A DNA stretch of 64,000 bases from Heteronotia binoei (taxonomy: Eukaryota). The stretch is taken from the NCBI RefSeq assembly GCF_032191835.1, contig NC_083240.1, positions 25,358,001 through 25,422,000 on the forward strand. The letters are read 5' to 3'. The translations under genes were made by a program, and so were the position numbers. Positions 6,232 through 59,346 of this stretch are shown piece after piece. Position 1 is the stretch's first letter, and each line of letters opens with the position of its first letter. The notes under the pieces are model-generated. The model ran no database searches and was not told the origin of the DNA. It worked only from the letters and a program-made list of their open reading frames with translations.

Positions 6232-6297
<66 letters not shown>

Positions 6298-9522: not shown

Positions 9523-15744
<6,222 letters not shown>

Positions 15745-18964: not shown

Positions 18965-19000
18965 TCAAATGTAGATCACGTCTGTTTTATGCTGCTGAAC
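18965..19000 (-). CDS. NF2L: NF2-like terminal coding exon ([11 protein letters not shown])
   Basis: ttgttttctacacag acceptor, phase 0, 11 aa then TGA. Same length and hydrophobic ending as the NF2 isoform-2 tail PQAQGRRPICI. Confidence 0.72.
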   Translation of the reverse strand, partial: VQQHKTDVIYI

Positions 19001-22000
19001 CTGTGTAGAAAACAATCACAATCTGAGGGGAAAGGAAGTTATTTCTACCTTTGAAAGGTAGAACACCTGGTTTGGGAACTGAGACAATACAAACATTTTC
19101 CAAATTCACAGGTAAACTAGAGATGCACAGTTTCTGGAAATTTTTAAGTCACAGGAATTTACTGGATTTTACAACATAACTGGATCTTGGAGGTTTTTTG
19201 CCATCTTCCAGGCACTGGAGTGTGGGAGGTAGTTGTGAATTTCCTGCATTGTGCAGGAGGTTGGACTAGATGACCCTAGAAGTACCTTCCAACTATAATT
19301 CTTGAATTATAGTAAATAACAAAACATTATAATAACTCAAAAATGGAAAATATTATGCCAAAATATTATAAATACTACTTAATAAACTGCATAATTTATA
19401 AATTAACTGGCATATAAAATTATACTATTAGGTGTATTTATAGAATTTAAAGTAGACAACTTTATTTTGTACTAGAAAAACTGCAACTGTTCCCAGTATT
19501 TGAGAAAGAGCTGCAAACTGCTGCATCCTATGCTATTACAGCGCTTGTATCTTAATTTTCACCATTGTTAGAGGTACAGAAAAATAAAAACACATTCTAA
19601 TCTGTAGTAAACATGTGTATCATTTGGACAGAAATATTCTCATGCAGTCACAATAGGCAGGGCTGCCAGCATTTAGATATTAAGTTGAACTATAGGACTG
19701 AAAACACAACTCTTTAATAATGTATTAACATTAAAAGCATTATCACAATTTAATTGAAGCCAATATTGTATTTAAACAAATTCAAGCACCAGTAGTTTTC
19801 AACTCTGGAGTGACGCTGCTTTCACAACGTTTTCACGACAGACCTTTTTACGGGGTGGTTTGCCATTGCCTTCCCTGGTCATTACACTTTCCCCCAGCAA
19901 GCTGGGTACTCATTTTACCGACCTCAAAAGGATGGAAGGCTGAGTCAACCTGGAGCTGGCTACCTGAATCAGTTTCCACTGGAATCGAACTCAGGTCATG
20001 AGCAGAGGGTTCTGACTACAATACTGGAGCTTTACTGCTCTGCACCACGGGGCTCAGAGTGGCCTACAGTATACGTACATATCATGGGCCTACAGTATAC
20101 TTAGGAGTAAAATGTTATTCATTCCAAAAGGGCAAAAAGGAGGGATTTTAGTCCTTCCTCAAATTTTGCCATTTTCCCTTGGCTTTCACATCTCCAAAGC
20201 AAACTTAAGAATTGGGGACAGGTTATATAGTTCTGGCCTTACCAACTCAAAAGATAACATCTGGAAATTTGGGAAGTAGAATGCTGGAGTCAAGGGGCCT
20301 CAATCTGGCCATCAGATAATTCTTGTGAAAAAAAATAAAAGGTTACTGGGGTGAGGGCTTACAGGGCTCTTCTCACCTCCAACGTCCTAATCCAGACTTT
20401 TAAAATTGGTGTTTGGGGGGGGGGGGCAGAGAAATAGAGGATAAATGTTATTTGGGCTGAGGCTTGATCCCCTAGCCTGGAACACTGACTGGTGAACGTC
20501 TTTTTGAATTGGAATTTTTAAAAAGCTAGTTACCTTAATTTGCTTTCTGGTTCCTGTCCCCACGTTTTCGGCAACAAACGGATCTGTCTGAAGGGAAGGT
20601 TTTTCTATTGGCGTTCCAAGTAAGGTGTTGTCATCTACATTTAACGGATGCATCAAGAAAGGCCGCTGAAGACTGTCTAGAAGGTCTGCCTCAAAGGCTT
20701 CGATCCACAAAGGGGTCTTGAAAGAACACATCAACCAGAAGTTAGCTTTGTGCCAACTCAAAGTGCATCCACATTACAAACCTGAACTGGTATGAAGCCA
20801 CTTTAACTGTCATGGCTCCATTTCCCCCCTCCCCAAAAGAGTCCTGGGGAGGCAGTAAGAGGTCTTCATATGATCAGAAAATCATTGCTACCCTTGGCTC
20901 CAGGGGAGTCCTGGAGGCATCTGACCGGCCACTATTGAAAGCACATACTCAATTAGATGGGCCCTTGGTCTGATCCAGTACTGACTGCCTTTATGCATTA
21001 TTGATTGCCTTTATACTTATAAAAAATAAGTTAGCTTGACTGCATTTCAACCTTGTACATTTTCCGGGAAGACCGGTCCAAGGACCCAAGCAATTCATTC
21101 CAGCGTGAGAGAAGCCCAGCCTGTTTCTCTTCAAGTTTTAGAGCATGGATTTCTGACTTGAGCTCTTTTAGCCGATCTTCAAACTTCCGGCTCTTATCAA
21201 GGTAATCTAACCTGTTGGGCACAGAAAAGAAACTTAAGGAATGAATGAATATAAATATCAGGATCAAGTATACCCTATACATCATCAGGTATGCTGCACA
21301 CATTTTTATTTTTTTTATTATTTATTAATAATTAAAATATTGTTTTAACTATGGTTAGTTTCTGAAACTGGGGTTCATCTTTCTCTCAGTAGCCTCAGAG
21401 GGAAACACCACAGAGCGAGTCAGAATGTCTGAATTTATACAAAACATGAAACAGATTCATAACTCAATTTCATATCGTTGTCTGTTGGACTGAACTAATC
21501 ACAACTAGTGGTGTGGCCCACATTCAGGCAATCACACTAATCTTGGCTACTTCAACCATGGTTTTATGTGCTGTTTGAGCTGAGCCACCTCTAGGACAAA
21601 CACTCCCAAGGCAACTGTTAGTGTATCTTGTGTCGATTATACAATAAACTTTCTGGTGAGCTCATTACCACCCCAACAGTGGAGGCTGCCCATTGCATCT
21701 CTGCATGATCTTCTGCCTCCTTCATACCAGCTTCCTCTGGGGCAGGTAATTCTTTTGTAATTTTTGCATTAAAAGGGATTTATGCATTCAATCACTCGCT
21801 CTTCTTGGCACATGGTTTCCAGGACTTCCTTTTTTTCCTCCACTGCATGGTTTTGAGCTCCTCCCTCTTCTGCTACTAGATGACACTCCTACCTCTCCCT
21901 TTCAATCTCCAAGGAGAGCCTCTTCAAGTCAATATCTCTTAAATCCGACTTCACACCTCCTTTGTCAGCACTGGCATCTCTGGTGTCAGCCAAGGAGGAC

Positions 22001-24208
22001 GGGGAGCACTTAGTGGCATGCAGAGAAAGGCAGAAAGAAAGGGGCATTGTTATTTGTTTATGACTTTTACATACTGCTTTTTGGTTAAGGTGGGGAGCGG
22101 AGAGCTCTTCCAGAATTGTTCACAATAAAGAATTAAAATCAATATTGAAACAAAAACAACAATAAATTGCCACATAAAAAGCAAGCCCAAAGCTTGATAG
22201 TTTACCTGGAATCCAAGCCTCCAAAGGCCAGGCTAAATTTTAAAAATGCTATTGCAACACAGCAAGCACACACCTTGGGGAAGTACATGCCAAAGATCCA
22301 GGGATCACAAGAAATGCCTACTGGACCAGATCAAAAGCTCTACCTAGTCCAACATCTGTGTTGTCCACAGAGGCTGGCCGGACACCTTCAGGAATCCCAG
22401 AAACAAGATATGAATGTGACAGCCTTCCCCTCTGCCACTATTACTAGTACGGTTACTAACATCTAGCATGGACAGGTATATTGCCTCTAAACATGGAGGG
22501 TCCATTTAAACTCTATGGCTTGTAATCGTTGATAGATCTTCTATAGATAGGCATTTTGGTGTCTCAAGCACTGAGGTAGAGACATTGCATCTCAGCGTCA
22601 AGCAGAAACACTGCAAGAGTTCCCAAGGTTTCAGGTCGTTTCCTGGAATCTTTACTGTCCTTGCAGTTGTGACCTCCCACAAATATCAGATAGCTTACAC
22701 CAGCATAGGAGCTACTACCTGAAATTGGTTTAATCATCCTTCCTCCAACATATCCTCAAAACTTGGATTATTTTAGCAGAGACTGATTGATTTAGCACAC
22801 CTCCAAAAAAGAACTCAAAGGCAGTTTACATTTTCCACTTAAAACCATGAATCCACATGAAGCTATCTCATAGTGAATCAGACCTTTGGCCCATCAAGGA
22901 CAGTATTGTCTACTCAGATTGGCAGCAGCTCTCCAGGGTCTCAGACTGAGGTCTTTCACATCACCTGTTGCCTTGTGCTGTTAACTGGAGATGTCAGAGA
23001 CTGAACCAGGGACTTACATGTAAAGCAGGGCTCTTCTACTGAGCCATAACACCTCCCCTAATAAAATAAAAGAACCACATGATATTTTTGTCCACTATCA
23101 CACACCCAGACTGCATTGGATATATTTAGATCCTTCCCTGAATGGCATTATTAGTTATTATTTTATCACAATAGACTAATGTGGCTATCCCAGTGGAATG
23201 TATTTCTCAGGGTTTTAAAGCCAAGGAACCTTGACAGTTAAGCAAACTTTAAAGCTGGTTTACTTTTTGAAGAAGGAAAATTGAAGAATTGCAGATTTAT
23301 ACCCCACCCTTCTCTCTGAATCAGAGACTCAGAGCAGCTTACAATCTCCTATATCTTCTCCCCCCACAACAGACACCCTGTGAGGTGGGGGGCTGAGAGG
23401 GCTCTCACTGCAGCTGCCCTTTCAAGGACAACCCCTGCGATAGCTATGGCTAACCCAAGGCCATTCCAGCAGCTGCAAGTGGAGAAGTGCGGAATCAAAC
23501 CCGGTTCTCCCAGATAAGAGTCCACACACTTAACCACCACACCAAACTGGCTCTCTTTTCTAGTACAGATGTGCTGCAGACTTACTGGAAGATGATTAAC
23601 CTTGTTGACATCTAGAAGTTTCTGCTTGACCTTTTCTTCAGCTTCCCTGGCTTCCTGCAGGTCTTGTTTCAAATGCTCGGTTTCTTTGGCCCTGCCAAAC
23701 CAAACCACTGCCATGAACATACAGGCCCTTGACTACAAATACACAACCATTTCTTAAACCAGAGGGCTGAACTTGTGACCAATGACTCCGAGGCCAGAGG
23801 CAAATATGATTCAGTACAGAACCAAATGTATTGCTTAAAAAAATAAAATGAGATCTAAGGGTAGGTGGAATACTAGAATCATTGATATGCCAAGGAAATG
23901 GCAGGCAAATGTTTTCATGGGACTAGTGGGCTTCTTGGAGATACTTAGCAAAATGGAAGCAAAAGAGGTGAATAGCTGCCAGTTATGCAAGTGCAAACCA
24001 TGCACAGATGCATACCAGTGCACTAAAACAATCATGCAGGGTGCTCCTGGATATGTTTATTACTCATTGTGAGGCCTGCTTCCTAACAGAGAACTATAAA
24101 AACATTATAGGTTATTTATCAATATGTCAATTATCAGTAACATTAAGTGGTTTTGCTCTGAATTTTGATGTAATTTGACCATTTAATTAGAAAAGGTGGC
24201 TGGCCTAT

Positions 24209-24299
<91 letters not shown>

Positions 24300-27200
24300 T
24301 TATTCTTATATCCCGCCCTCCCCCGCCAAGGCAGGCTCAGGGCAGCTCACAGAACATGGTATACCATGATTACAATAAAATACAATCATTACTATAAAAG
24401 GCAGTTAAAATATAATTACATTACATTCATCAGTTAAGTTAAATACACATTAAAATATTATAAATTATAGATTAAAGTGCTACAGTTCGATATATGCATA
24501 GGATGGCTTGTCTATGTTGTAGACAATCCAGCCAAAATTGCCATAAGTCTTACTATGGATGGGACCAATCTGCTGATAAATTAAAGTTCATCATGAATTT
24601 TGAGCAGTTAGTGGATCACAAAACGATGTTTGCGAACTGAAAAGCCACCATGACCTTCCACAAATTTTGATGCAGTTTTTGGCAGTGCGTGGAGACCAGA
24701 AAAGAGGCGTTTAAAAGACTCCCAAGACATTTAAACCCCTGCTCTTTATGAAAAACAGCTGAAAAACAGCCATGAACCAAACCACAAAAATGGAGTTTGT
24801 GCCCATCCCTAAATCTTGCCTCAGTTATTTAGTATAAACTACTGTAGGGGTGGGAAGGTGAAGGTGCAGTGAAAAAACAAATGCAGAGCTCTTTCACATG
24901 CACATGCTAGGAAAGGAAAGGTCCCCTGTGCAAGCACCAGTCATTTCCGACTCTGGGGTGATGTTGCTTTCACAACATTTTCATGGCAGACTTTTACGGG
25001 GTGGTTTGTCATTGCCTTCCCCAGTCTTTTACACTTTCCCCCCAGCAAGCTGGGTACTCATTTTACTGACCATGGAAGGATGGAAGGCTGAGTCAATCTT
25101 GGGCTGGCTACCTTAATCCAGCTTCTGCCGGAATCGAACTCAGGTTGTGAGCAGAGAGTTCAGACCCCAATTATATTCTCAGTCATTAACTGTGAAAACA
25201 GTTTAACTGGCAAAGTTTTCATCTTGTAAAAAGAAATCTGTGACTGTACCTTTTCCCTTTTCATTGTTTGGGAATTATTTTAATCTGCCAGCACCCAACT
25301 GGCACACAATCTGCCCCCACAGAGCTTTGTCAGTGCTCAAAGTGCCCAGTGCGATGACATCACCCAGAAGTGATATCATCGCACCGGGACACTCTAGCAT
25401 TTGGGTACAAAACTCTATGGCACCACAGAGTTTTTTACCCAGTACTAGAGCATCCCCACACAATGTGCCCTGCTTGATGACCTCACTTCCGGGAGACATC
25501 TTTGCATGTGTGAGAGGAATCCCCCTTGCCAGCTGCCAGTAAGATCTGGCAACCCTAGACCTCTGCAGTCTGAAAGTAAGCTGTAATTCCATGAGACCCC
25601 CAGGTCTCCCCAGAGGCTGGCATCCCTACCTGCGGTCCGACTCTTTCACCAGCTGCATGGCAATGAGCTCTGCCTCCCGCATCTTGTGCTCCATCAGGCG
25701 CTTCTCCTCCTTGGTCTTCCGGGCTGCCAGCTCCAGCCTTTGGCGTTCCTGCTCAGCCTCGGCAGCATTCTGAGCCAGCAGCTTCGCCTCGTCCTCCGCA
25801 ATTTGGGCCTTCTCAGCCAACAGCTCTGCAGCTGCCTCTGAACGGCGCTGAAGAGGGATTAAAATGGGACAGTCTAAACCAATCTTGAGATTTTCTTTTT
25901 TTAAAAAAATGCTTTCAACATCTATGGTATTTGGGAATTGTTACTTAAAAAAAATGATTTTAACTTTTCAGAATTTGACCTCAAGGCAGGAATGACAGCT
26001 TCCAGTTTGGGAAATTAGTGAAGATTTGGGGTGGAGTGTGGGGAGAGGATGGACCTCAGTGATGTATAAATGTCAGAGTCCACCCTCCAAAATTGCCATT
26101 TCCTTCAAGGGAACTAGTCTTTGTAATCTAGAGATCCGGGAGATTGCCAGGCCCCAACCTGGAAACAAGCAACACTACACCTGGAAACAAGGCTGAAGAA
26201 TAGCATAGATGGCAACCAGCTAACTGAACAGCTCATCTCCAGTCAGCAAATGCACTCTGGCTTCCAGTTATCGCAGGCTCCAACCAACTCAGAGCACCTC
26301 CAAGGCCGAGTCACCATGGCAACCCCTGCTGCCCAGCTTCAGTAAGGCTCACCAGGGCCTCGTTGGCTTGCCTGGCTTCATCTTCCACCTCAAACAGGCG
26401 CCTTTCCAGCTCTTCCTTGGCTCGCTCAGCCTCTTCACGCAGCTGCTTCTCCCTCGCAAGCCGCTGGTGCTCCATCTGCAAAATTGTAACATTCAATAGT
26501 CAGGCATAGCCAGGAGCCGCATCCCAGTTTAAGAAAGATGCTCTTGTGAGTGTAACATTTTGTAGGTAAGCTTTTGCTTTCCCAGCATCATGTTTACAAC
26601 AATCCTTGGCTAAGGGACTAGTCTGCTGGAATCTGCTATTTACAAGGAACAATCAAGTCTTCATTATCATCCACCTCAGTCTCTACAGCAACCAACCTCC
26701 AAGTAGGTCCTGGAGATCATGTGGAATTAGGGATGCCAGCCTCCAGGTGAGACCTGAGGGTCCCCTGGAATTACAGCTCATTTCCAGATTACAGAGATCA
26801 GTTCCCCAGGAGAAAATGGATGCTTTGAAGGGTGGACTCTAGGGCATTGTACATTACTGAGGCCCCTGTTCTCAGACTCCACCCCCAAATCTCTAGGAGT
26901 TCCCCTATCTGGAGCTAGCAACCCTACATCTCAGCCAGCAGCCCAGGACCTGGCAACCCTACCTGGAATTACAACTGATCTCTGCAAAAGCTCAGCTACC
27001 CTGGAGAAAATGGCTGCTTTGGAGAGTGGACTCTAAGGCATTATAGCCCACTAAGATCCCTCCCCTTCCCAGACCCCACCCCCAAACATCCAAGAATGTT
27101 GCAGCTCCGAGCTGGCAACCCTAGCCTCCCAACCCTGCAAGCTGATCAAGAGCTCTGTGACTGGGAAAGCATTTTCAGCAGCTGTGGAGCCAACTTTTCT

Positions 27201-30200
27201 CCCAGAGTCACCTTCTTTCTCGCCTTCTCTTCCCTGGCTTGAGCTTTCATTTGCTGGATCTCAATGGGGTCTACTCTCCTCCTCCTCATGAACAAGTCGT
27301 GGTTTCCAATGAAAAGCTGCATGATCTGCAGGAAGAAAACAGGAGTGTTTTTGTTGGGCCGCAGCAAAGGTCCAAGGTTGGGCTTCCAGCAGACGTCACA
27401 CAGATGTTTCTGGGAAGCCTACAAGCAGGGCCCAAAGTACATGGACATTCAATTTCTCCAGTGACCCCTATTGTCTTGCAGACAGTTAAAGATGCTGGGG
27501 ATGCCCTAACAAAGCCCTGAAGTACTAGGGTCAGCCTATCCAAAAGAACACTACAACCCCTATATTTCATCAAGGCGTGTGTTTTGTTTAATTTATTTAT
27601 GATTTATATCCCGCCCTTCCCACCAAGGTGGCTCAGGGCGGCTCACAACACATGAAATCCAACATAACAATATTCAGTTTAGGCATTTACACAATTAAAA
27701 ACATTTAAAATATAAAAACATTAAAACAACAATTAAAACAACACAGAAGTCTAATAGAGCTACATTTAGTTTCCTATGCCGGTTAGTTATAGGCCAGCCG
27801 GAAGAGGGTTGTCTTACAGGCCCTGCGGAACTGAGCAAGGTCCCTCAGGGCCCTCACCTCTTCCGGCAGCTGGTTCCACCAGGAAGGGGCCATTACAGAG
27901 AAAGCTCTATCCCTGGTAGATTGCAGGCGGGCTTCCTTTGGCCCGGGGATAACGAGAAGATTTTGGGTTCCCGATCTCAGCACTCTCTGGGGAACATGTG
28001 GGGAGAGACGGTCCTTCAGGTAGGCAGGTCCTAGGCCATATAGGGCTTTAAAGGTGATGACCAGCACCTTGTACCGGAAGGGTTAAGTCACTTCTGACTT
28101 ATGGCAATCCCATAAATTAATGACCTCCAAAACATTCTATCGTTAACAACCTTGCTCAGTGATTGCAAACTGGGGACCATGACTTCCTTTATTGAGACAA
28201 TCCCTCTCATGCTGGGTCTTCCTCTTTGCCTGCTGCCTTCAACTTTTCCTAGCACGATTGTCTTTTCATCAGACATGCAGAGAGGCATCTTGGTGGCTGC
28301 CTCTCTGCCCTGGAATTCCCTCCCCCTGAAGACTCGCCAAAGTCTCTGCAAAGATTGCTTTGTTCAAATTGGCTTTCAGGTGTCCAGGGGGAAGAAGATA
28401 AGACTGGGGTGATTTGGAATATCAGGGAGTTATGGAATTACACAAGCTGCTCCAAGTCCTTGGGATGCAATGGGCTATAAATTAAATCAAGTGAAATACA
28501 ATTTCAAAAAAGAATTAACTTTAACCAGAGGTCTGCTGCCTCTCTACCTGAAAGTTCCGTTCACAGTTATAATGTCACTCAGAAGAAGAAAAACTCCTAT
28601 AACTTATCCCTTTCAAGGTGAGGACACAATTATTCATATTTTGCTGACAGGTGGACAAAGGCTGAGAGGTAAATGACTTGCCCCTGATCACACTGTAGCC
28701 TCCTGGATCAGGTCCAAGCAGAGCACTGCACCAACAGATCACTTGCCCCTTCATTCCAGTGTGTTACTTTATCCTTCAATGGCCCACCAGGAACTTGGCT
28801 TTTTTATACCACTCCCTCCCAGTGTGACAGAAAGATGCCCGCAGGGCGGCAGCTGACAGAAAACCCTCACCAGTTTATTGACTTTGGGCTGTGAGGAGAA
28901 GAACTTGAAGACTTCGGCTTTCTTGTCAATAGGCTTAATTGTTAACTGGAGAGGAAGAGAGAGAAAAGAGGGCGTAGTCCATCTCATGATGAAACAAGTC
29001 ACAAGGACAAATAGGCAAACATACCTCAAGACATACTGGTGCCAGGGAAGGGAAAAGATCCAACCAGAAATGACAATCCCCTCCCAAGATATAATACCCA
29101 CCTAGTCCCAGTTCCATCTGAGACACTCTCTCCTTTTGGCTTCCGAGTACCAACAATGAGCCACCAGACAGAAGGCAGAAAGCAGACAGGTGCATCCTCA
29201 TCAGGCCTGGATCAGCCAAGAGGCCCTCTGCTCCCCAGCTTCCAACTACTACCAATGGGTCCCTCAGAGCAAGCAGCTGGGCCCTTTCTTTGCCATGACT
29301 GGATCCCAGTCCAATTAGGGCTGCCAATTCCCAGTTAGGAACAGGGGATCCCCCAGTCTGGAGGCCCTCCCCTTGCTTCAGAGTTATCAGAAAGCGGGGA
29401 GGGGAGAGGGAAATGTCTACTGGGCACTCCATATGGAGACTGGTTCCAATAGGGTATAAATGGGTATCTGTGCTCTAGGGGGGGCTGTTTTTTGAGGTAG
29501 AGGCACCAGATTTTCAGTATAGCATCTGATGCCTCCCCTCAAAATATTCACGAAAGTTTGGACCGGGGGTTCAATTCTATGAGCTCAACAAAAGATGACC
29601 CTATCCTCCATTATTTCCAAATGTAGGGAAGGCATTTAAAAGGAACTTGGTCCCTTTAAATGTGATGGAATCGTGCTTGTCACAACCTTGCTCCTGGTTC
29701 CACCTTCAAAGTCCCCAGATATTTTTTGAATTGGACCTGGCAACCCTAAGTCCAATTGAGGAAGTCCTCCTTCGAGCTAACTGATCTGGTTCCTTTCATG
29801 AATACATGAGGCTGCCCTGTACCATCAGACCCTTGGTTTGTCACGGTCAGTGTTGCGTCCTCCGACAGCCAGTGGCCCTCCAGGGCCCCATAGGTCAAGG
29901 TCTTTTGCATCACCTGCTACCTGATCGTTTTAACTGGAGATGTTGGGGATTGAACCTGGAACCTTCTGTACACCCAGCAGATGCTCTATCAGTGGAAGAC
30001 TTTGTATGAAGAGCCCTTTTACATTTTAGAGTAGTTTTATGGTTTTATTTCCCTGCATAAACTAACTTGAGAACTATGACTCTAGAGCACATAATTATAG
30101 CAAACAAATAAAACATGGTCCATGGTCCACAGAGAAGTTCTCCTTCCCGAGAACCTTTTGAAATGGACAAATGATGCCCCAGAGCAGAAGCATCTACAAG

Positions 30201-39200: not shown

Positions 39201-42200
39201 CTCTCCCAATGCCTGTGTCAGGTTTTCACAGCCTCCCACACACCGGCAAACCAGAGCAGAAAAGTAATCAAAAACTTTGCAAAGGCAGTAGTAAGGTGGG
39301 GCTTCCCCAATGCATTCTTCATACCTCAGGTACCACTTCTGCTTGGCACTGCTCCAAGTAGAAGCAGAAGATGAGGCTGAGTTGCCTGAAGCCGAACCGA
39401 AATATGTAAAATCAAGCACACCAGGGGAAGTAACTCAGCAGCAAGAGAACCTGCTTTGCACAAAAGAGGTCCCAGGTATCTCAGGTTAAAAGGAGCTCAG
39501 GCAGCAGGAAAAGATCTATCTCTTGGCTGAGATCTTGGGGAGCAGCTACTGGTTGGAGAAGTCAAGCTATGCAGATCAGTGGTTTGACTCAGTATAGGGC
39601 ATAAGTGCAGTTTTGCATGCAGAAGGTCTGAGGTCCAATTCTTGGCACCTCAGCACACATGAAACTGTCTTAACAGACCAAAATTAGTGGGGAACGCAGA
39701 AATCTTCTGTATCAGACCCACCACACAAGTTGAAGACATGGAAAGCAGAGCTCACAAGCCAAAGAACATCATGAAGCTGCCTTACACCAAATCGGACCCT
39801 GGGTCCATCAAAGGCAGTATTGTCCACTCGGACTGGCAGCTGCTCTCCAAGGTCCCAGGCGAAGATCTTTTGATTCCCCTTTGAACTGGAGATGCCACGG
39901 ATTGAACCTGGGACCTTCTGGATGTCAAGCAGAGGCTCTAGCACTCAGCCACTGCCAGTTTAAGTGATACAGGAGGAGAGCCGCTGCCAGTCTGAACAGA
40001 TAATACCCTGGCCTTGATCAGTCAAGGGTCTGGTTCAGTATAATTTAATTTAATTATTATTATTTATTGATACCCCGCCCTATCCTGCAAGCGGGCTCTG
40101 GGCGGCTTACAACATTAAAAAACCTTACAAAACATCAAACAAACTACATCCAAACTAAATAATCTCATAATTGCAGAATTAACAGAAACCATGATCCACA
40201 GCAATGGCAACAAGTCATAAGCCACACATAGGCTGGTAGTGTTCAGCATAAGATAAGCACCTAGATGGTAAGATGCTGGGGGGAGCGATGATTTCAGGGG
40301 GCACCCGTTGGATCAATTAAAAGCCTGGCAGAAGAGCTCCATCTTACAGGCCCTGCAAAACTTAGAAAAGTCCCGCAGGGCCTGGATCTCCAGTGGGAGA
40401 TCAATCCATCAGGTGGGGGCCTGAACCAAAAAGGCCCTGGCCCTTGTTGAAGCCAGTTGGGCGTCCTTAGGACCGGGATCACAAGAATATGTTGTGCAGC
40501 TGTCCTCAGAACCTGAGGCAGCTCCATGTGTTCAAAAACAATCCTGTTATCCTGGGCACAGCCAGAGGATGAGCTGGGGTTGGGGAAATCTTCAAGGAAT
40601 CCGGGGGCTGAGAATGGAGCCTGGGTGGAATCTAGAACTTCTGGTCAGGCACAGAGAAAGGGAAGAATTCAGAGGATACTGGAGAGAGTCTGGCAAAATC
40701 TGGCCTTCCTGGTTGCTCAACAGAAGAGGGTCTTACCGGTTCGCAGCTCTAGTTCTTGAACACGTTGGCTCCTTCAGGACCATAAAGATAAGCTATTTTT
40801 GGCACCTCTGTCTGCCTCTCTGTGCTTTCACATGGGAACAAGAGCGGCAGCAACTTAGATGCACACAAATGCCACTAGCTTTGGGATCAAACAGGATCTT
40901 TTAAATTTCTGATAATCATTGTAAACATTTCTTCGTGAATTAAAACTTTCACTTTCATTGTTGTGTTCTTAAAAAGTTTATTTTTACATTATGCTATGAC
41001 AAAAGCCCATCTCTTTCTGGGCAGGCATCCCTTTGAAATCAGTAAATTCTGCTCTGCCCTGAGAGCAGCTAAATGATCCAATCACATCTGATGCAGAAGA
41101 GTAGATTTACCAAAAGCAAATGGTATGAAAGAGGCATGCCTAGAACAACGGATCATACAGAGATGCAGCAGGCAGCCTCCTCTGTGGACAAATGCTTTGG
41201 ACTCCCAGGATACATTCAAATTTTTAATTAACTTCTTTTTCATGATCCAACATTTGGGAATGATGAGGAAACAGCGGTAGCATCTAAGACAAAGTATGAA
41301 TGTTTTCTGGGGAAGAAGGGTTTGCACAACAGCATGTGTTCAACTAACATCAGCCAAAAAGAAGGACTGAAAGAAAATTCATCTAAAACTTCAAAACCAA
41401 CTTTAAGGAAAAGAAATACCTTCTGACCTGCAGGAAGAATAAGTGTTGGGTGATCTCCTGCAGCAGCTCCTCTTCAACTTTCTCTGGGTAAAATTTAGCC
41501 AGAAAGCGAAAACAAACCGGATCTTCTTTGGGGATTTCCTGATCTAAAACCTTGAGGTGAAAAAGGGAATAGGATTAGCCAAGCTTCTGCTGAGAGCAGG
41601 TGGGGCTGTGAATGTTTGTAGAGTAGCTGCTCTTTCTAATGTTGTCTCAGACACCAGCTCCGCGGGTGGCTTTAGCCTGTTTGCTTGCTTTTTCAGACCC
41701 GCATCCCATTTGCAATATGGGTTTAAAAACACTCTCTTCTTTCCCACTGTTTCAAGGAGTGAGAAAAACAAAAAGGCTTGATGAGAGCCACCCGGTGAGA
41801 TGAAATGGGGAGAGATTTTTCACACAGGTTGCCTAAGCACTTTGAAATCCCTCTCTCTGGCAGCTGGAGGGCATGCACAGAAGGCAGCAGTACAATTTTA
41901 ATTGCCCCAGGATCACATATTTAAATAAGTTCAAGGTGACAAAGAACTTGTGATTGTGTTTCAGATTTTCTGTTGCTTCATCTGGGATCAGATGTGTTCC
42001 AGCATTTACAGTTCTTCCCCCAAACCTGGACGTCTTTCCACACACCCCATTTCTACTATAGAATTTTTTTCTCTCGGTTTCATGGATATTGATTCTCTTC
42101 ACCACTCTCTCAACACAATATTTCTGAGACTTTGTCCTTTTTTCACTGGGAGAGGTTGGTTAACAAAATGTTTCATGCAGGGTAGGGGTTAGAACACATG

Positions 42201-45200
42201 ACAAAGGAGACCAAAGTTTGAATCCCCACTCTGCTTTGAAGCTCACAAGGTGATCCTGAGCCAGCCTCTCTCTCAGCCTAACCTACTTTACAGTGTTGTT
42301 GTGAGGATAAAGCTGTATGTCTCCTTGATCTTCTTGGGGGGAGGGGGGATTTGGTAAAGATGGTGAGGGGTCTGGAAACCTACAAGGAAAGGCTAAAGAG
42401 CTGGGCATGTTTAGCCTGGAGAGGAGATGACTGGGAGGTGATATGATCACCATTTTCAGGTACTTGAAGAGCTGTTTTCTGTTGTCCCAGAAGATCAGAC
42501 CAGAACCAACAGGATGAAATTTAAATCAAAAGAGTTTTCAGCTAAACATTAGGAAGAACTTTCTGACAGTTAGAGTGGTTCCTCAGGAGATGGTGGGCTC
42601 TCCTTCTTTGGAGGTTTTCAAACAGAGGCTTAGACCATCTGACAGCAATGCTGATTCTGTGAACTTAGGCAGATCCTCAGAGGGAGGGCAGGAAGGGTTG
42701 GATCAGGGCTTAGTTCTTGTGGCCCTTTCTTACACACCCAGGGAATGCCAATCAACACTTCGGGGTCAGGAAGCAATTTTCTCCAGGCCAGATCCTGGAG
42801 GGTTTGTTTGGGGTTTTTTGCCGTCTTCTGGACATGGGGCTGGGGGCAGTGGGGGTGCGGGGGGAGATATTTGTAAATTTTCTGCATTGTGCAGGGAGTT
42901 GGACTAGATGCCCCCAGATGCCTTCCAACTCTGTGATTTAAAAATGGACAGGCAGGCACTAGAGCTGACTAGGAAGACAGCTGCAGGCTCCATGGGAGTC
43001 TACTTCGGCCAGTGCTGAAAGAGATGCACTGACTATCTATTGTGTTCCGATTCCATTTCAAGGTGTTGGTATTGACCTTTAAAGCCCTTTATGGTCAGGG
43101 ACCTGTCTATCTGTGGGACCGCAGATAGACAGGTCCCTGTCTATCTGTCTATATGTGTTTCTCCACATATTCCCCAGAGAGCGCTGCATTCAGGGACAAA
43201 AAATCTGTTGTCCATCCCTGGACCAAAGGAGGCTAGGTTGCGTTTGATGCGAGCCAGGGCCTTCCCGGTGGCAGCACCAGAATTGTGGAATGCTCTCCCA
43301 GAGGCCTGCGGGATCTTTCTACTTTCCGCAGGGCCTGTAAGACCGAATTGTTTCAACAATATTTAACCGAGAGAGAGCTGCCACCTGACATCATATAGAG
43401 TACTTGGTGATCACCGTCTGAAAAGAAGAACCCGCCTATATTGTACATCGTAGCGATACAGGACCATGAAATGGTTTTTTAAAAATTTAAAATTGTAATT
43501 ATGTTTTATTGGTTTTTAACTTGTGAAAATGAATGTTGTGAGCCACCCCGAGTCCGCTTGTGGACAGGGNNNNNNNNNNNNNNNNNNNNNNNNNNNNNNN
43601 NNNNNNNNNNNNNNNNNNNNNNNNNNNNNNNNNNNNNNNNNNNNNNNNNNNNNNNNNNNNNNNNNNNNNNNNNNNNNNNNNNNNNNNNNNNNNNNNNNNN
43701 NNNNNNNNNNNNNNNNNNNNNNNGTATGGGCCATCCATCCAAGGCTGGCATATAGAGGGTGTCATACAGCAGCCAGCAGGGATGGGATACTTAAAATGGG
43801 AAGATCATAATCTGCATGCAACAGAAAACACATAAGGGAAGCTGATGAAAGGGACTTGATGTCATCCTCTTGTTTCCCGGCTCATATTCAAGGTCGCCAT
43901 GCAGCACCAGCTTTGTTTGCTTAGGGAGGAAACAGCACTCAGGTTTCACTTTCAGCCTGAGAAATGCTATCAATCTGAAAAACGGAGGGCTTCCAAACCT
44001 TTTTATCCATCTTCAGCCAGGTGATTATCCCTTTGATGGAGTACTGCAAGCCAAAGAACCAGGTTTCCCTCAGACCCAGGGCACAACAGACCTGATCGAA
44101 TAAGTCTTTCCCTTTCCATTTTACCTAGGAATAGAAAGGCAGAAAAATAATATTTATTGAAGACAGCGGTTGTACAGCCAGAATTTAGAAATAAATAATA
44201 CTTTTTATATACAAAGCCAGCCTCTTGTAGTGGTTAGTGTATTGGATTAGGACCAACGAGATCCCATTCAAAACATCACTCTGACCGATTTCGCACTCAC
44301 CCTTATGCCGCTCTCACGTCCGTCTTCTCAGCGCAGCGTGCTCCCGATTTCCCACTATTTGTGCTGGGGCTGCAGCAAACATCGTGGTTTTCATGCAGCG
44401 AATAAAAACCGCTAAAAACCAGTTTCTGTTTGCTGTGCAAAAACAGCAACGTTTGCTGCAGCCCCGACGCAAATATTGGGAAATCGGGAGGTCGCCACGC
44501 TGAGAAGACGGACGTGAGAGCGGCATAAGGTGAGTGCGAAATCGGCCTCTGTGATGAAGCTGAATCGGTGGCCTTTGATCAGTCCTTCTTTGTTAGCCTA
44601 CCATACAGGGCTGTTGTGAGGATAAAGCTGAAGAGAATGAAATGTCCCTCCTTGGCTGTGGGTTCCCAGGTTAGATTACTCATTCAGGCACTCGTTCTCG
44701 GGTCCATTCAGCAGAGACAAGCTGGCTCAAAACATGAGCTGTTAACTTGCAAAGAGACAGCTTCAACCACCAACATCTTCAGCCAACATACAAAACTGGA
44801 AACTGAAACACGAGCGCCACTCAACAGGACCAAACTAAATCACACAGATATTAGGGAGGAGCAGATTGTTCTGTTACATACATATACACAACAAATATAC
44901 CACAGAGAGAACCTTGTAAGCCATCTTGAGCTTTTTGGAGGAAGAGTGAAATAGAAATGAAATAAATTTAAATAACACCCTCTTTTTCTCAACACTGCCG
45001 TATCCCAGGGCTATATGTATTCCATATTTACATGCAAACACAGCCTGTGGTACTGTTTGCAATACTTGTTTTCTAAAATGAATCGAGTTGATTAATAGAG
45101 GTGCTTACATTCTAATTAAAACAGTCTGATATTACACAGCCTTTCATTATTATTTTTTTGTACAGAGCCCTGATCCATTTCACATGCAAGTGGGGAATGC

Positions 45201-47268
45201 GATATCCCTAGATACTCAGCTCAACACAAATTCATTCAGTAAAATTTAATTACTCAATACCAATGAGATGTTTTATATTCATTGTGAGAGTTATTTATTC
45301 TTTCATTCACAGTGATAAACAAGTAATGGTATATTGTTATATTCCATGCACTACCACCCCTTTAAAATTCATATTTCCAAAGAATTTTTTTGTCTTAGAT
45401 TTTGTGCATTTGTGTTGTTTCTCATTTCTAGACCTTATGGTTGATAGTCTGCATGGTAGCACCTGATGAAATCTTAGATGCTAAAGAGGTGCCCATACCA
45501 AGGTCTGCTGTGGCTAAGACTTCAGTCCCCTGGATACATCTTGTCTTTCCCAAGCAGAATTATTAACCATGTTATATCCTTGCATTTATATAAGGCAGGG
45601 GTGGCCAATGGTAGCTCTCCAGATATTTTTTGCCTACAACTCCCATCAGCCCCAGCTGATGGCTGGGCCATGCTGGCTGGGGCTGATGGGAGTTGTAGGC
45701 AAAAAAACATCTGGAGAGCTACCGTTGTCCACCCGATATAAGGGAGAAGGGGCACTACTTTTGGCCAGACTAGACAACGTGTGTGATACATGGCCATCTG
45801 ACAGCAATGCTGATCCTGTGATTTTAGGGAAAGGTATTTGTGAATGTCCTGCATTGTGCAGGGGATTGGACTAGATCATGGGTGGCCAAATTTGCTTAAT
45901 GTAAGAGCCATATGGAATAAATGTCAGATGTCTGAGAGCCGTAAGACATGAATGTCAAATGTTTGAGGGAAGGAAGAAAGGGTGGAAAGAAAGCAACTTT
46001 AACTTTAAATGCATTCTCCAAGTTGCTGGCTGGCTTGGAGAAATGCCTTCTCTAAGCCATCTGACAGGGCAGTGGGGGCTTCAAGAGTCACATAATATGT
46101 GTGAAAGAGCCACATGTGGCCCCCGAACCACAGTTCGGCCACTGCTGGACTAGATGATCCTGAGGGTCCCTTCCAATTCTATGATATGTGTTGGGTCAGG
46201 GGAAGGAATCCCCTGACCACAGCACACCAGGGTTGCCAGTCTGTGTGGAAAATACCTGGAGACTTTGTGGGTGGAGCCAGGAGGAGGTGGGGTTTGGGGA
46301 GGGGCCTCAGCAGGGTACAATGCCCTAGAATCCACCCTTCAAAGCAGCCATTTTCTCCAGGGAAGCTGATCTCTGCCAGCTGGAAATCAGTTGCATAAGC
46401 GGGAGGCTGGCAACCTGGAGGCTGGCAACCCTATGGACACACCGAGCCCCAACATGGGGCAAACAGACCATCCCACTGCAGCCGCTTTGGCTCTGGAAAA
46501 TGATGTGGAGGGAGGAGACTGAAGGTCATCCTCCCCTAGGGTTGCCAGCTCTGAGTTGGAAAATTCCTGGAAATTTGGGGATGGAGTCTGAGGAGGGCAG
46601 GGTTTGGGGCTTCAGATTGCTGCACTTGAAGTGATTCACAGTTTCAGAACAATGAACCCCAAGCGCTGGATTCTTCTCACTATAGATGCTAATTTTCTGC
46701 CACCCCAGCCTTTCTCTTCTGCTCTGATCAAGCCAATTACAACATGTACATTTGCATTCTTTACAAGCATTCGCTACAACACCCTCCCCCCACTTTCTGG
46801 CTGGGACCCAGAGATCTTCATTCCTACTCATGATGGGAGCTTTTATTACTCTGGAAAGCCCACACTCCGAAACTCTGGTTTGTCTCTAAGGTCCTACAGG
46901 GCTTGAATCTAATGATCCTTTATTCCAGTAATTTATTTACTGTGGCCCAGTAACAATTCTTTCATAGTTGGGAAGTGGGCGGATTTAAGTGTGGAAGCCT
47001 TTTAACTTCACATGTAAATAAAACTCCTCATATTAAAAACTAGCAAGCAAGAGAGCGTTCAGCCCACGGTTTTCTACATGCTAGAAAACTGGCGCATGTG
47101 TGCGAATCCAGCCACCACACCATCTGTTACAGTTCGGAGGAAAACTTTACCGCTCGATTCTGGAATGTACAAACTTACCTCACAACTAAACTCCATTTCG
47201 GCATCCATTGTTATCACTTTCACTTTAAACGTCTTTGGCTGCTTCCTTTTCAGTCCTGTGATTGACAT
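18965..47268 (-). CDS. NF2L: Merlin/NF2-like FERM-domain protein (NF2 paralogue, nf2b/NF2L type), complete, 578 aa (639 aa with candidate exon 20534-20716)
   Basis: join(47179-47268,43999-44124,41428-41550,33945-34028,32153-32221,31158-31240,30729-30804,30306-30443,28871-28945,27212-27325,26353-26475,25630-25847,23586-23691,21893-22008,21052-21211,18965-19000). Uninterrupted frame. Exon sizes and phases mirror NF2 (126,123,84,69,83,76,135/138,75,114,123,218,106). KRKQPKTF N-terminus, Blue box YQMTPDM and KRLSLEI are merlin signatures. Divergence and the SBDS/MRPS17 neighbourhood indicate the paralogue rather than NF2 itself. Confidence 0.93.
19783..20053 (-). mobile_element. Sauria SINE (tail missing)
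   Basis: Family similarity; complete 5' head gccccgtggtgcag. Confidence 0.85.
20534..20716 (-). CDS. NF2L: Candidate additional in-frame NF2-like exon (61 aa) with no NF2 counterpart
   Basis: GCTAAC branch point about 25 nt upstream, tgttctttcaag acceptor, 183 nt stop-free in phase 0/0, AAG|GTAACT donor. Confidence 0.55.
21052..21211 (-). CDS. NF2L: NF2-like exon 15
   Basis: [30 protein letters not shown]...RKMYK. Weak donor AAG|GTTGAA; read-through gives VEMQSS* (stop at 21031-21033). Confidence 0.85.
21893..22008 (-). CDS. NF2L: NF2-like exon 14
   Basis: [38 protein letters not shown](R). Donor is clear; the acceptor (ccactaag) is the only in-phase AG after the pyrimidine tract. Confidence 0.88.
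22855..23048 (-). mobile_element. tRNA-derived SINE family A, degenerate
   Basis: Similar to 54289-54501. Confidence 0.65.
23283..23555 (-). mobile_element. tRNA-derived SINE family B (Squam-type), full length
   Basis: Head gagagccagtttggtgtggtggttaag, B box ggtttgattcc, tail ...tataaatctgcaattcttc. It ends about 25 nt downstream of the NF2L exon 13 donor. Confidence 0.8.
23586..23691 (-). CDS. NF2L: NF2-like exon 13
   Basis: [35 protein letters not shown], 106 nt. Confidence 0.95.
24210..24296. repeat. (TAA)n microsatellite forming the tail of a minus-strand L2 3'-end fragment (to about 24355)
   Basis: Direct inspection; adjacent cccgccct...cagggcagctcac L2 terminal hairpin. Confidence 0.9.
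24912..25166 (-). mobile_element. Sauria SINE
   Basis: Family similarity. Confidence 0.85.
25630..25847 (-). CDS. NF2L: NF2-like exon 12
   Basis: [26 protein letters not shown]...KESDR(R), 218 nt, coiled coil. Confidence 0.96.
26353..26475 (-). CDS. NF2L: NF2-like exon 11
   Basis: [41 protein letters not shown], 123 nt. Confidence 0.96.
26728..26926. mobile_element. Older hAT-like MITE (TAGGG(A/T)TGCCA termini); related copies at about 26950-27124, 26000-26160, 46220-46432
   Basis: Terminal inverted repeats present; no TSD recognisable. Confidence 0.55.
27212..27325 (-). CDS. NF2L: NF2-like exon 10
   Basis: [38 protein letters not shown], 114 nt. Confidence 0.96.
27582..28077 (-). mobile_element. 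L2 LINE 3' end
   Basis: ORF2 C-terminus [18 protein letters not shown]...[19 protein letters not shown]...[10 protein letters not shown], then 3' UTR with gccgccctgagcc...gggcgggatataaat terminus. Confidence 0.85.
28085..28270 (-). mobile_element. BovB/RTE LINE 3' fragment
   Basis: [21 protein letters not shown]...[20 protein letters not shown] matches the RTE-BovB ORF end. Confidence 0.8.
28871..28945 (-). CDS. NF2L: NF2-like exon 9
   Basis: [25 protein letters not shown], 75 nt. Confidence 0.96.
29316..29748. mobile_element. Non-autonomous hAT transposon
   Basis: TIRs tagggctgcca / tggcaacccta; perfect 8-bp TSD agtccaat. Confidence 0.88.
30306..30443 (-). CDS. NF2L: NF2-like exon 8
   Basis: (Q)[45 protein letters not shown]; CAGCAG tandem acceptor gives 138 or 135 nt. 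Confidence 0.95.
30729..30804 (-). CDS. NF2L: NF2-like exon 7
   Basis: [25 protein letters not shown], 76 nt. Confidence 0.96.
31158..31240 (-). CDS. NF2L: NF2-like exon 6
   Basis: [27 protein letters not shown](R), 83 nt, contains the Blue box. Confidence 0.96.
32153..32221 (-). CDS. NF2L: NF2-like exon 5
   Basis: [23 protein letters not shown], 69 nt. Confidence 0.96.
32373..32571. mobile_element. Penelope-like element remnant in inverted-repeat configuration
   Basis: gtagaaaagagcaagagtccagcagaaccttaaagactaa ... ttagtctttaaaggtgcttctgaactcttgttcttttctac; central CTGAAGA hammerhead-like motif. Related pieces at about 13040-13095 and 53695-53810. Confidence 0.65.
33945..34028 (-). CDS. NF2L: NF2-like exon 4
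   Basis: [28 protein letters not shown], 84 nt. Confidence 0.96.
34417..34696 (-). mobile_element. tRNA-derived SINE family B, full length
   Basis: Close similarity to 23283-23555. Confidence 0.8.
35430..35880 (+). mobile_element. Non-autonomous hAT transposon
   Basis: TIRs tagggttgcca / tggccacccta; perfect 8-bp TSD cacaagct. Confidence 0.9.
36072..36547 (-). mobile_element. Non-autonomous hAT transposon, same family, inverted relative to 35430
   Basis: TIRs taggattgcca / tggcaacccta; perfect 8-bp TSD tttatgca. Confidence 0.9.
37167..37446 (+). mobile_element. tRNA-derived SINE family B
   Basis: Family similarity. Confidence 0.75.
37788..38405. mobile_element. Non-autonomous hAT transposon (ca(g/a)tgttccctctaagctg TIRs)
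   Basis: 19-bp TIRs; 6/8 matching TSD gtcacaag/gtcgcagg. Confidence 0.75.
38410..38700 (-). mobile_element. L2 3' fragment
   Basis: ttcgtagggcctgcaagacggagttattc ([10 protein letters not shown]) on the minus strand. Confidence 0.65.
39766..39952 (-). mobile_element. tRNA-derived SINE family A
   Basis: Family similarity. Confidence 0.7.
40041..40520 (-). mobile_element. L2 3' end
   Basis: [30 protein letters not shown] plus terminal hairpin and AT-rich tail. Confidence 0.8.
41428..41550 (-). CDS. NF2L: NF2-like exon 3
   Basis: [41 protein letters not shown], 123 nt. Confidence 0.96.
42370..42940 (+). mobile_element. CR1 LINE 3' end with 3' UTR
   Basis: aggaaaggctaaagagctgggcatgtttagcctggagagg... 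and ttggactagatg...ttccaactctgtgatt terminus. Confidence 0.8.
43040..43569 (+). mobile_element. L2 3' end running into the assembly gap
   Basis: [35 protein letters not shown]; terminal tgtgagccaccccgagtcc. Confidence 0.8.
43570..43723. other. Assembly gap (154 N)
   Basis: Run of n. Confidence 0.99.
43999..44124 (-). CDS. NF2L: NF2-like exon 2
   Basis: [42 protein letters not shown], 126 nt. Confidence 0.96.
44283..44547. mobile_element. 265-bp fold-back MITE (PIF/Harbinger-like), inserted in a family-B SINE
   Basis: About 100-bp near-perfect arms g(a/g)ccgatttcgcactcacc...; 3-bp flank tct/tct. Confidence 0.8.
45596..45735. mobile_element. Palindromic hAT MITE
   Basis: caggggtggccaatggtagctctccaga fold-back; perfect 8-bp TSD atataagg; sister copy at 60461-60596. 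Confidence 0.88.
45877..46147. mobile_element. Non-autonomous hAT element inserted into a CR1 3' terminus
   Basis: catgggtggccaaa / ttcggccactgctg ends; perfect 8-bp TSD gactagat. Confidence 0.85.
47179..47268 (-). CDS. NF2L: NF2-like coding exon 1
   Basis: [30 protein letters not shown]; GAG|GTAAGT donor; likely acceptor at 47296-47297. Confidence 0.93.
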
Positions 47269-47432
47269 GTCTGTCAGCCAGCAGGTGAGCCGCACCTGGC
47301 CCCAAACAATGGAAGAATCAAGGTTATGTGTGTGGATCTGGCTGCATAATTCAGCGAAGTACGCATTTAGAAGCAGGTGAACAACGCCTGGCGAAATCGC
47401 AGAAGCCAGAACTCTGCAGCCATCAGGATGAT

Positions 47433-47654: not shown

Positions 47655-47704
47655 AGGATGATGATATATTTTGAACTCTATCGATCAATACATTGTAGGA
47701 CAAA

Positions 47705-50384: not shown

Positions 50385-51040
50385 CTCTTCCGTTTTTTCC
50401 CTGGAAGCGCAGACGCTGTACCTGGAGTCAAACTGGCTCTCTAATTCCTTCTCTGAATGAAGGAATTAAGAGAAATAACCCTTAATCCTAAAGATGGCAT
50501 TCTTTCGCCCATTTAACCAAGCTGGGAGGGGAAAAACACCAAGCACCGGAGGACAGATCTGGCAGCGGCTCTCCTCCCCTTTGTTTGCTCCCAAAGGCAG
50601 GCAGCGTGTCAGCTCAGCTGCCCTCCAAAATCGCATTCACTTTCCCAGGTGATAGGAGGGGTGCGAAGCATTTCCTGGCTGGGCGCTTCTCTTCTCTCCC
50701 AGTCTCCTCCCACGCTGCCAGCCCTGGGGAGACGCGGAGAGGGAAACATTTTGCTTCCCTTCCCCTCCTCAATCCGGTTTCACGAGGAACACAAATCATC
50801 GGAGTCACTTTCACAGCATGCCCGAGAGGGGCTCCCCTCCGACGCACCCCCCTAAGTGGGGCTCTTCATTATTCATAAAAGTGAAACCATCAATATTGAT
50901 AGTGCGCTGCTATGAAGCACCGCGCGCACTGCCGGTGCTGGATGAATGGCAGCGATTGAAAGGATCCATGTGGGGAACTAGACAGCATGGCGGGGGCGGG
51001 GGGACGCTATCCCTGCTGCTTCGCCCGGTGACCTGAGGCC
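50385..51040 (-). promoter_or_regulatory. CpG-rich putative NF2-like promoter with a non-coding first exon ending at 50385
   Basis: Local CpG enrichment at 50560-51040. Minus-strand donor GAAGAG|GTAAGA at 50385/50384; no in-frame ATG before an upstream in-frame TAA. Confidence 0.45.
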
Positions 51041-59223: not shown

Positions 59224-59346
59224 ATGTCTGCGTTGCGTGGAGCGGTCCATGCCAAATGGATCATAGGGAAAGTCATTGGGACCAAAATGCAGAAGACTGC
59301 CAAAGTGAGAGTAACAAGGCTGGTGCTGGATCCTTACTTATTAAAG
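59224..59346 (+). CDS. MRPS17: MRPS17 coding exon 1
   Basis: Acceptor at 59215-59216, ATG at 59224, AAG|GTAAAG donor. Confidence 0.96.

What the first reader, a model, noticed from the sequence alone, without database searches (positions are those of the whole stretch)
18965..47268. Intact second merlin gene (NF2 paralogue) apparently absent from mammals
Seen: a complete 16-exon FERM / coiled-coil / C-tail reading frame with NF2's exon sizes and phases. It retains the Blue box (YQMTPDM) and the S518-equivalent kinase site (DLKRLSLEI), and starts at the equivalent of human Met9. Established: merlin is the upstream Hippo-pathway tumour suppressor; teleosts have nf2a/nf2b and birds have an NF2-like gene, and I know of only one NF2 in mammals. 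Inference: this is a functional, little-studied whole-genome-duplication ohnologue. Reptiles would then run a two-merlin Hippo input, with possible heterodimers or tissue partitioning, which is relevant to regeneration in lizards.
Basis: partly seen in the sequence, partly recalled or inferred. Interest (0 to 1): 0.75.

Follow-up and report, generated by a model that had tools for sequence, protein, structure and literature searches.

The report
Gecko merlin-like (nf2b) gene, already annotated
This is an intact, conserved second merlin gene of Bynoe's gecko, but it was described in 2019, is already annotated in public databases, and also occurs in marsupials, monotremes and anteaters, so it is ordinary.

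Summary
The gene is real and intact. It lies on the minus strand from 47268 to 18965 and has 17 coding exons, all with GT-AG splice sites, encoding 639 aa. The translation is letter-for-letter identical to RefSeq XP_060115668.1, "merlin-like isoform X1 [Heteronotia binoei]".

The N gap (43570-43723) sits inside intron 2, and no coding residue is missing. The Blue box, the S518-equivalent site and the start at human Met9 are all confirmed.

A tree places the gene in the nf2b/"merlin-like" clade (SH-aLRT 99). An AU test rejects grouping it with canonical NF2 (p = 0.00012). The same species also has a canonical merlin (XP_060105730.1), 64.6% identical, on a different contig. dN/dS against the Paroedura picta orthologue is 0.077. 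Gene order (MRPS17 – gene – SBDS – TYW1) matches Paroedura.

The paralogue reading therefore holds. "Absent from mammals" is wrong: marsupials, monotremes and Tamandua carry it. It is also not new: Shabardina et al. (PMC6978628) described it as "merlin1", and zebrafish nf2b has been knocked out.

The scan had separately noted the 61-codon exon in this same window.

The parts
47179..47268 (-). Coding exon 1 (E1): ATG at 47268, 30 codons ([14 protein letters not shown]...).
   Evidence: G at -3 of the ATG. An AG lies 2 nt upstream of the ATG, so this may be the second exon of the transcript.
43999..44124 (-). E2, 126 nt.
   Evidence: GT-AG.
43570..43723 (.). Assembly gap (154 N) inside intron 2.
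   Evidence: No coding residue is missing between E2 and E3.
41428..41550 (-). E3, 123 nt.
33945..34028 (-). E4, 84 nt.
32153..32221 (-). E5, 69 nt.
31158..31240 (-). E6, 83 nt. Carries the Blue box YQMTPDM.
30729..30804 (-). E7, 76 nt (FERM_M end).
30306..30443 (-). E8, 138 nt (FERM_C). This exon was the search query.
28871..28945 (-). E9, 75 nt.
27212..27325 (-). E10, 114 nt.
26353..26475 (-). E11, 123 nt (start of the helical domain).
25630..25847 (-). E12, 218 nt (helical domain).
23586..23691 (-). E13, 106 nt.
   Evidence: The tail of RefSeq X3 (500 aa) matches the reading frame that runs on into the intron after this exon.
21893..22008 (-). E14, 116 nt. Carries DLKRLSLEI (S507, the S518 equivalent).
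21052..21211 (-). E15, 160 nt (ERM_C-like helix).
20534..20716 (-). E16, 183 nt (61 codons, phase 0/0).
   Evidence: Omega 0.36. Predicted disordered, at low confidence.
18965..19000 (-). E17, 11 codons ([11 protein letters not shown]) plus the stop codon.
   Evidence: 65 database sequences end in VIYI. dN = 0 against Paroedura.
50557..50623 (-). Putative non-coding first exon (5' UTR), inside a block conserved with Paroedura (49811-50987).
   Evidence: Skink mRNA nt 1-67 match at 78.6%, E = 5e-9. This is an inference, not confirmed by reads.
12039..14310 (+). SBDS exons (neighbouring gene, tail-to-tail).
3350..3601 (-). TYW1 flavodoxin exon (neighbouring gene).
59224..61740 (+). MRPS17 exons (neighbouring gene, head-to-head).

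Best explanation
The stretch is the Heteronotia binoei (Bynoe's gecko) orthologue of the vertebrate gene variously called merlin-like (RefSeq), nf2b (fish) or merlin1 (Shabardina et al. 2019). This gene is the ancient sister of NF2.

It is an intact protein-coding gene under purifying selection. It has 17 coding exons and encodes 639 aa: a FERM domain, a long coiled coil, and a C-terminal region that ends in a tetrapod-specific 61-aa cassette followed by an 11-residue ...DVIYI end.

How it most likely works (inferred). It is a merlin-type membrane-cortex scaffold. It would be recruited through its FERM domain, where the lysines I recall as the phosphoinositide-binding ones are kept. It would be regulated at S507, the S518 equivalent. 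It would feed into the same contact-inhibition/Hippo input as NF2, partly redundantly with it, as zebrafish nf2b does with nf2a.

It lacks the first 8 residues of NF2 and the isoform-1 tail (...AFFEEL). I therefore expect it to behave like the open, isoform-2-like form of merlin.

Shown here: identity, intactness, orthology, selective constraint, and coexistence with canonical NF2 in the same species. Inferred: every biochemical step.
For: - The model is 639/639 identical to XP_060115668.1, merlin-like isoform X1 [H. binoei].
- All 16 junctions are GT-AG and collinear with the Paroedura and Eublepharis orthologues.
- Tree: sister to Paroedura (98), within squamates (100), within the nf2b/merlin-like clade (99). 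AU test against a clade with canonical NF2: delta lnL 232.5, p = 0.00012.
- Identity is 93.0% to the Paroedura merlin-like protein and 64-65% to lizard canonical NF2, and 64.6% to H. binoei's own canonical merlin XP_060105730.1, which lies on a different contig.
- dN/dS is 0.077 overall (dS 0.377). By region: FERM 0.06, helical 0.019, E16 0.36, E17 0.
- Gene order MRPS17 - gene - SBDS - TYW1 is the same in Paroedura.
- The Blue box, S507 and the K-K pairs are conserved.
- Skink RNA-seq contigs hold the uninterrupted orthologous ORF, including the E16 equivalent.
- Zebrafish nf2b is the more highly expressed paralogue in the early embryo. Double nf2a/b knockout gives schwannomas and meningiomas. 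nf2b crispants have a regeneration defect that nf2a loss worsens.
Against: - There is no expression evidence from this species.
- Tetrapod members differ from fish nf2b at the C-terminus: VIYI plus E16, against ...FEEV in fish. They also sit on a long stem branch (0.28). The zebrafish function may therefore not carry over.
- Shabardina et al. argue that merlin1 is unlikely to be a tumour suppressor and report positive selection on it.
- The AlphaFold model is poor (mean pLDDT 64), so nothing is learnt about head-to-tail closure.
Confidence: 0.93

Rival explanations
1. It is the gecko's canonical NF2 orthologue, simply fast-evolving.
For: Exon 8 matches human merlin better than moesin in the PDB search (45.9 against 36.2 bits). 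The domain order is the same as NF2.
Against: The tree and the AU test reject it. A separate canonical merlin is annotated in the same species, 91.7% identical to mouse. The flanking genes are SBDS, TYW1 and MRPS17. The N-terminal MAGAIASR and the isoform-1 tail are both missing.
Confidence: 0.01
2. It is a decaying or non-functional copy (a pseudogene, or a gene under relaxed selection) that merely keeps an open frame.
For: There is no expression evidence from this species. E16 evolves quickly, with omega 0.36. The paralogue was lost in most placental mammals.
Against: The 639-codon frame is open and all 16 junctions are canonical. Omega is 0.077 at dS 0.377 against Paroedura. The gene is retained from sharks to mammals. 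A skink orthologue is transcribed and spliced.
Confidence: 0.03
3. The gene is functional but has left the Hippo/tumour-suppressor role. In tetrapods it would be only a cortical scaffold, or have a new function, as Shabardina et al. propose for merlin1.
For: It lacks the NF2 N-terminal extension and the isoform-1 tail, and carries a tetrapod-specific cassette. The tetrapod stem branch is long, at 0.28. Positive selection has been reported.
Against: The Blue box, the S518-type site and the FERM core are strongly conserved, with FERM omega 0.06. Zebrafish nf2b compensates for nf2a, and double knockout gives NF2-type tumours.
Confidence: 0.35

Closest known systems
RefSeq "merlin-like" / fish nf2b / "merlin1" of Shabardina et al. 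2019 (PMC6978628)
   Same: Exact sequence identity with XP_060115668.1. Member of the same clade. Carries the tetrapod C-terminal insertion, the Blue box and the S518 equivalent, and lacks the NF2 N-terminal extension. Conserved neighbours MRPS17, SBDS and TYW1.
   Different: Nothing of substance. The insertion is 61 aa here, against the "68 aa" the paper gives for tetrapods.
Canonical NF2 / merlin (merlin2, nf2a)
   Same: FERM, coiled coil and C-terminal region in the same order. Blue box. PAK/PKA-type serine. An 11-codon terminal exon, like the isoform-2 end PQAQGRRPICI.
   Different: Only 64-65% identical overall, and 72-74% in the FERM domain. It starts at the Met9 equivalent. No ...AFFEEL tail exon was found. 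It has an extra 61-aa cassette. It lies at a different locus. It evolves faster: canonical lizard against bat is 91%, while merlin-like lizard against koala is 71-77%.
Ezrin / radixin / moesin
   Same: FERM and ERM-helical architecture.
   Different: 42-46% identity. ERMs fall outside the merlin clade at support 100.

Membership tests
Merlin subfamily of the ERM/FERM proteins | FERM domain followed by an ERM-type helical domain and a C-terminal region. | tested here: met
   Pfam FERM_M, FERM_C, ERM_helical and ERM_C on the exon ORFs. The Paroedura orthologue, representative of the 90% cluster that holds the identical RefSeq protein, carries PF09379, PF00373, PF09380 and PF20492.
Merlin subfamily of the ERM/FERM proteins | Blue box (YQMTPEM-type motif) and the S518-type KRLS site. 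| tested here: met
   YQMTPDM at residues 169-175. DLKRLSLEI with S507. Several of these positions are invariant in the 50-sequence alignment.
Merlin subfamily of the ERM/FERM proteins | Groups with merlins rather than ERMs in a phylogeny. | tested here: met
   The split between merlins and ERMs has support 100.
Canonical NF2 orthologue (merlin2 / nf2a) | Falls inside the canonical NF2 clade. | tested here: not met
   (AU p = 0.00012).
Canonical NF2 orthologue (merlin2 / nf2a) | N-terminal MAGAIASR extension and an isoform-1 ...AFFEEL terminal exon. | tested here: not met
   The protein starts at the Met9 equivalent. A tblastn search with seven C-terminal tails found no such exon between 14 and 22.5 kb.
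Canonical NF2 orthologue (merlin2 / nf2a) | Is the only merlin gene in the genome. | tested here: not met
   H. binoei has a separate "merlin isoform X3", XP_060105730.1, on a different contig. It is 64.6% identical to this gene.
merlin1 / nf2b / RefSeq merlin-like | Membership of the clade that holds fish nf2b and the tetrapod merlin-like genes. | tested here: met
   SH-aLRT 99 in both trees.
merlin1 / nf2b / RefSeq merlin-like | Tetrapod-specific insertion in the C-terminal domain. | tested here: met
   E16 (61 aa) aligns with the insertion in turtles, birds, mammals and a caecilian, and is absent from fish nf2b and from canonical NF2. The paper describes this feature.
merlin1 / nf2b / RefSeq merlin-like | Conserved neighbourhood. 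| tested here: met
   MRPS17 - gene - SBDS - TYW1 in both the window and Paroedura.
merlin1 / nf2b / RefSeq merlin-like | Transcribed and spliced in this species. | not testable with these tools
The only evidence is by proxy: skink mRNA contigs and the existence of a RefSeq model.

The most novel reading that the evidence does not exclude
Tetrapod merlin-like genes may be constitutively "isoform-2-like" merlins.

The 11-codon ...DVIYI terminal exon could be the counterpart of NF2 exon 16 (...RRPICI), which I recall as also 11 codons in phase 0. Bichir nf2b still has both ends as predicted isoforms: X2 ends ...EVIYI and X1 ends ...YLEDV. The two alternative tails would then predate the NF2/nf2b duplication.

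On this reading, tetrapods lost the FEEV-type closing helix and gained the disordered E16 cassette. The protein could then never adopt the closed head-to-tail state. Its invariant I-x-I carboxyl end might also serve as a hydrophobic (class II PDZ-type) ligand.
Probability: 0.3. Interest if true: 0.4.

Novelty: already known. Interest (0 to 1): 0.15.

Why it matters
It matters little as a discovery. The gene is annotated in this species, and the paralogue family was published in 2019.

Some value remains:
- No tetrapod member has been studied functionally.
- Recent zebrafish papers still call nf2a/nf2b "orthologs of human NF2" or a fish-specific duplication. The tree here shows the split predates jawed vertebrates, so nf2b results bear on this tetrapod gene rather than on human NF2.
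- Most placental mammals lost a gene that other vertebrates keep under strong constraint.

Tried and rejected
- Representative search. The search with exon 8 returned no full-length canonical NF2. The long hits were the merlin-like gene or ERMs, presumably because NF2 shares a 50% cluster with the koala merlin-like representative. I found a canonical-type query (sturgeon P0190) by its exon-8 signature and used it.
- AU test. On the full 61-row mixture-model tree it did not finish in three 300-s runs. I repeated it on 25 rows with LG+G4.
- Structure. AlphaFold2 on the Paroedura orthologue with a 50-row alignment gave mean pLDDT 64 and pTM 0.27. That is too weak for fold searches or for judging tail docking.
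- E16 origin. My first idea, that E16 derives from the isoform-1 tail exon, has no support. E16 is predicted as coil, and the exon order argues against it.
- Isoform-1-type terminal exon. A tblastn search found nothing.
- WGD paralogy. A literature search on NF2-NIPSNAP1 against MRPS17-NIPSNAP2 found nothing usable. That argument rests on my memory of human gene order.
- Joined model. The spliced model was never sent to a search tool. Only exon 8 was searched, by reference. The joined CDS and protein were built inside scripts from window.fa, for alignment, tree, dN/dS and the identity check.
- Human entry. A human merlin isoform (P0392) appeared among the cluster members. I did not use it.
Full report
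**What is there**

The window has one N run, at 43570-43723. On the minus strand between 47.3 and 18.9 kb, open stretches carry merlin-type peptides. Pfam scans of these stretches give FERM_M, FERM_C, ERM_helical and ERM_C. Exon 8 (window:30306-30443:-) was the only piece I sent to sequence searches, and I sent it by reference. In the PDB search it matches human merlin best (45.9 bits, against 36.2 for moesin), at roughly 60% identity by eye. That is too divergent for a canonical NF2 orthologue.

**Exon model**

The representative search and one word search returned full-length "merlin-like" proteins. The closest are from geckos: Paroedura picta (P0178) and Eublepharis macularius (P0174). Spliced mapping against P0178 gave 17 coding exons. 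All 16 junctions are GT-AG, and there is no insertion or deletion relative to the 639-aa orthologue. The CDS is 1920 nt with a single, terminal stop.

The gap lies in intron 2. E2 ends at ...WLKMDKK and E3 starts at VLDQEIP, exactly as in the orthologues, so no coding sequence is lost.

The scan noted that exon separately (s1-321182).

The joined model was built only inside scripts from window.fa. It was never sent to a search tool.

**Identity**

The translated model is identical at 639 of 639 residues to XP_060115668.1, "merlin-like isoform X1 [Heteronotia binoei]". The genome is therefore Bynoe's gecko, as another report of this scan had said (s1-322588). The gene is already annotated, with E16 included.

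RefSeq X2 (577 aa) and X3 (500 aa) have other ends. The X3 tail matches the reading frame that runs on into intron 13.

**Orthology**

- *Tree.* A 61-row maximum-likelihood tree places the gene as sister to Paroedura (98), within geckos (98), within squamates (100), and within a clade of fish nf2b plus tetrapod merlin-like genes (99). Canonical NF2/nf2a forms the sister clade (88), and ERMs lie outside (100). Sharks and chimaeras occur in both merlin clades, so the duplication predates jawed vertebrates.
- *AU test.* A 25-row AU test rejects uniting the window gene with canonical NF2 (delta lnL 232.5, p = 0.00012).
- *Identities.* 93.0% to Paroedura, 90.6% to Eublepharis, 64-65% to lizard canonical NF2, and 46% to ezrin. 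Canonical lizard against bat is 91%.
- *Second merlin gene.* H. binoei also has a canonical "merlin isoform X3" (XP_060105730.1) on a different contig. It is 64.6% identical to this gene and 91.7% identical to mouse merlin.

The paralogue reading holds.

**Selection and synteny**

I extracted the Paroedura CDS from locus L001 and compared it codon by codon. dN/dS (omega) by region:

| Region | omega |
|---|---|
| Whole CDS | 0.077 (dS 0.377) |
| FERM | 0.06 |
| Helical domain | 0.019 |
| E14-E15 | 0.028 |
| E16 | 0.36 |
| E17 | 0 |

The neighbours in the window are a TYW1 flavodoxin exon, SBDS and MRPS17. This is the same order as in Paroedura. From memory, human NF2 lies next to NIPSNAP1 and human MRPS17 lies next to NIPSNAP2. 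That would fit whole-genome-duplication paralogy, but I could not test it.

**What is wrong in the interpretation**

The gene is not absent from mammals. One search lists annotated orthologues in koala, wombat, wallaby, bilby, Tasmanian devil, Dromiciops, platypus, echidna and the xenarthran Tamandua.

Shabardina et al. (Genome Biol Evol 2019, PMC6978628) described this paralogue as "merlin1". They report it as present in most vertebrates and lost in most Eutheria except armadillos. They note a tetrapod C-terminal insertion, a retained Blue box and Ser518, a missing N-terminal actin-binding site, and a location on chicken chromosome 19.

The fish orthologue nf2b has been studied. It is the more highly expressed paralogue in the early zebrafish embryo, and double nf2a/b knockout gives schwannomas and meningiomas (PMC11646113). 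nf2b crispants have a defect after severe tail-fin injury that nf2a loss worsens (PMC12749930).

**Mechanism (inferred)**

The alignment shows that the Blue box, the KRLS site and the two K-K pairs are conserved. I recall those K-K pairs as the phosphoinositide-binding residues of merlin. The first 8 residues of NF2 are absent.

The C-terminus differs from both NF2 isoform 1 and fish nf2b (...FEEV). After E15 comes the 61-aa E16, then 11 residues ending in DVIYI. In the listed set, 65 sequences end in VIYI. So does bichir nf2b isoform X2, while its isoform X1 ends in YLEDV. This suggests that the VIYI exon is an old, isoform-2-like alternative end that tetrapods fixed.

No FEEV-type exon was detected in the window. 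AlphaFold2 on the orthologue predicts residues 558-639 as coil with pLDDT below 50, but the whole model is weak (mean pLDDT 64).

My best reading is a merlin-type scaffold acting in an open, isoform-2-like form and overlapping in function with NF2.

**Expression**

As a proxy, two Logan RNA-seq contigs hold an uninterrupted 649-aa orthologous ORF with the E16 equivalent and the VIYI end (SRR12656983 and SRR12656984; closest to the skink Lerista at 89%).

The first 67 nt of that mRNA match window 50623-50557, inside a block conserved with Paroedura.

**Verdict**

The paralogue interpretation is right in kind, but the claims of absence from mammals and of novelty are wrong. The finding is already known.

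Noticed in passing
window 49008-49080, 51834-52042, 54292-54501, 59565-59772; older copies at 22847-23046, 29798-29994, 39764-39952 and 2473-2609: A SINE family of about 210 nt with a tRNA-like head. Rfam and ARAGORN call the heads tRNA (Pro-GGG, Thr-GGT). Four young copies are 90-94% alike, and four older copies are 70-79% alike. They are not tRNA genes.
   Followed up: partly
window 47422-47510 and 47577-47665: An 89-nt inverted repeat, 87% complementary with a 66-nt spacer, lies 155-400 nt upstream of the start codon. It creates a spurious in-frame upstream ATG at 47466. It is probably a transposon remnant.
   Followed up: partly
window 3350-3601 (-), 12039-14310 (+), 59224-61740 (+): Neighbouring genes TYW1, SBDS and MRPS17, in the same order as in Paroedura picta.
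   Followed up: yes
window 58036-58513 (-): Reverse-transcriptase (RVT_1) fragment, likely a LINE remnant, just upstream of MRPS17.
   Followed up: no
L001 22957/23583 (Paroedura picta): The deposited Paroedura gene model uses an E13/E14 junction without an AG acceptor (...LPAAK|CPP). The window and Eublepharis use a canonical junction three codons away. This is possibly a mis-called junction in that model.
   Followed up: partly
P0199 against P0200/P0201 (bichir nf2b isoforms): Bichir nf2b has both a YLEDV-type end and a ...EVIYI end as predicted isoforms. This parallels NF2 isoforms 1 and 2.
   Followed up: partly
PMC11646113, PMC12749930: Zebrafish papers treat nf2a and nf2b as orthologues of human NF2, or as a fish-specific duplication. 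The tree here, like Shabardina et al., puts the split before jawed vertebrates.
   Followed up: yes
window 24207-24300 and 6223-6300: Long simple repeats. They translate as runs of I and of IY, in intron 12 and in the left flank.
   Followed up: no
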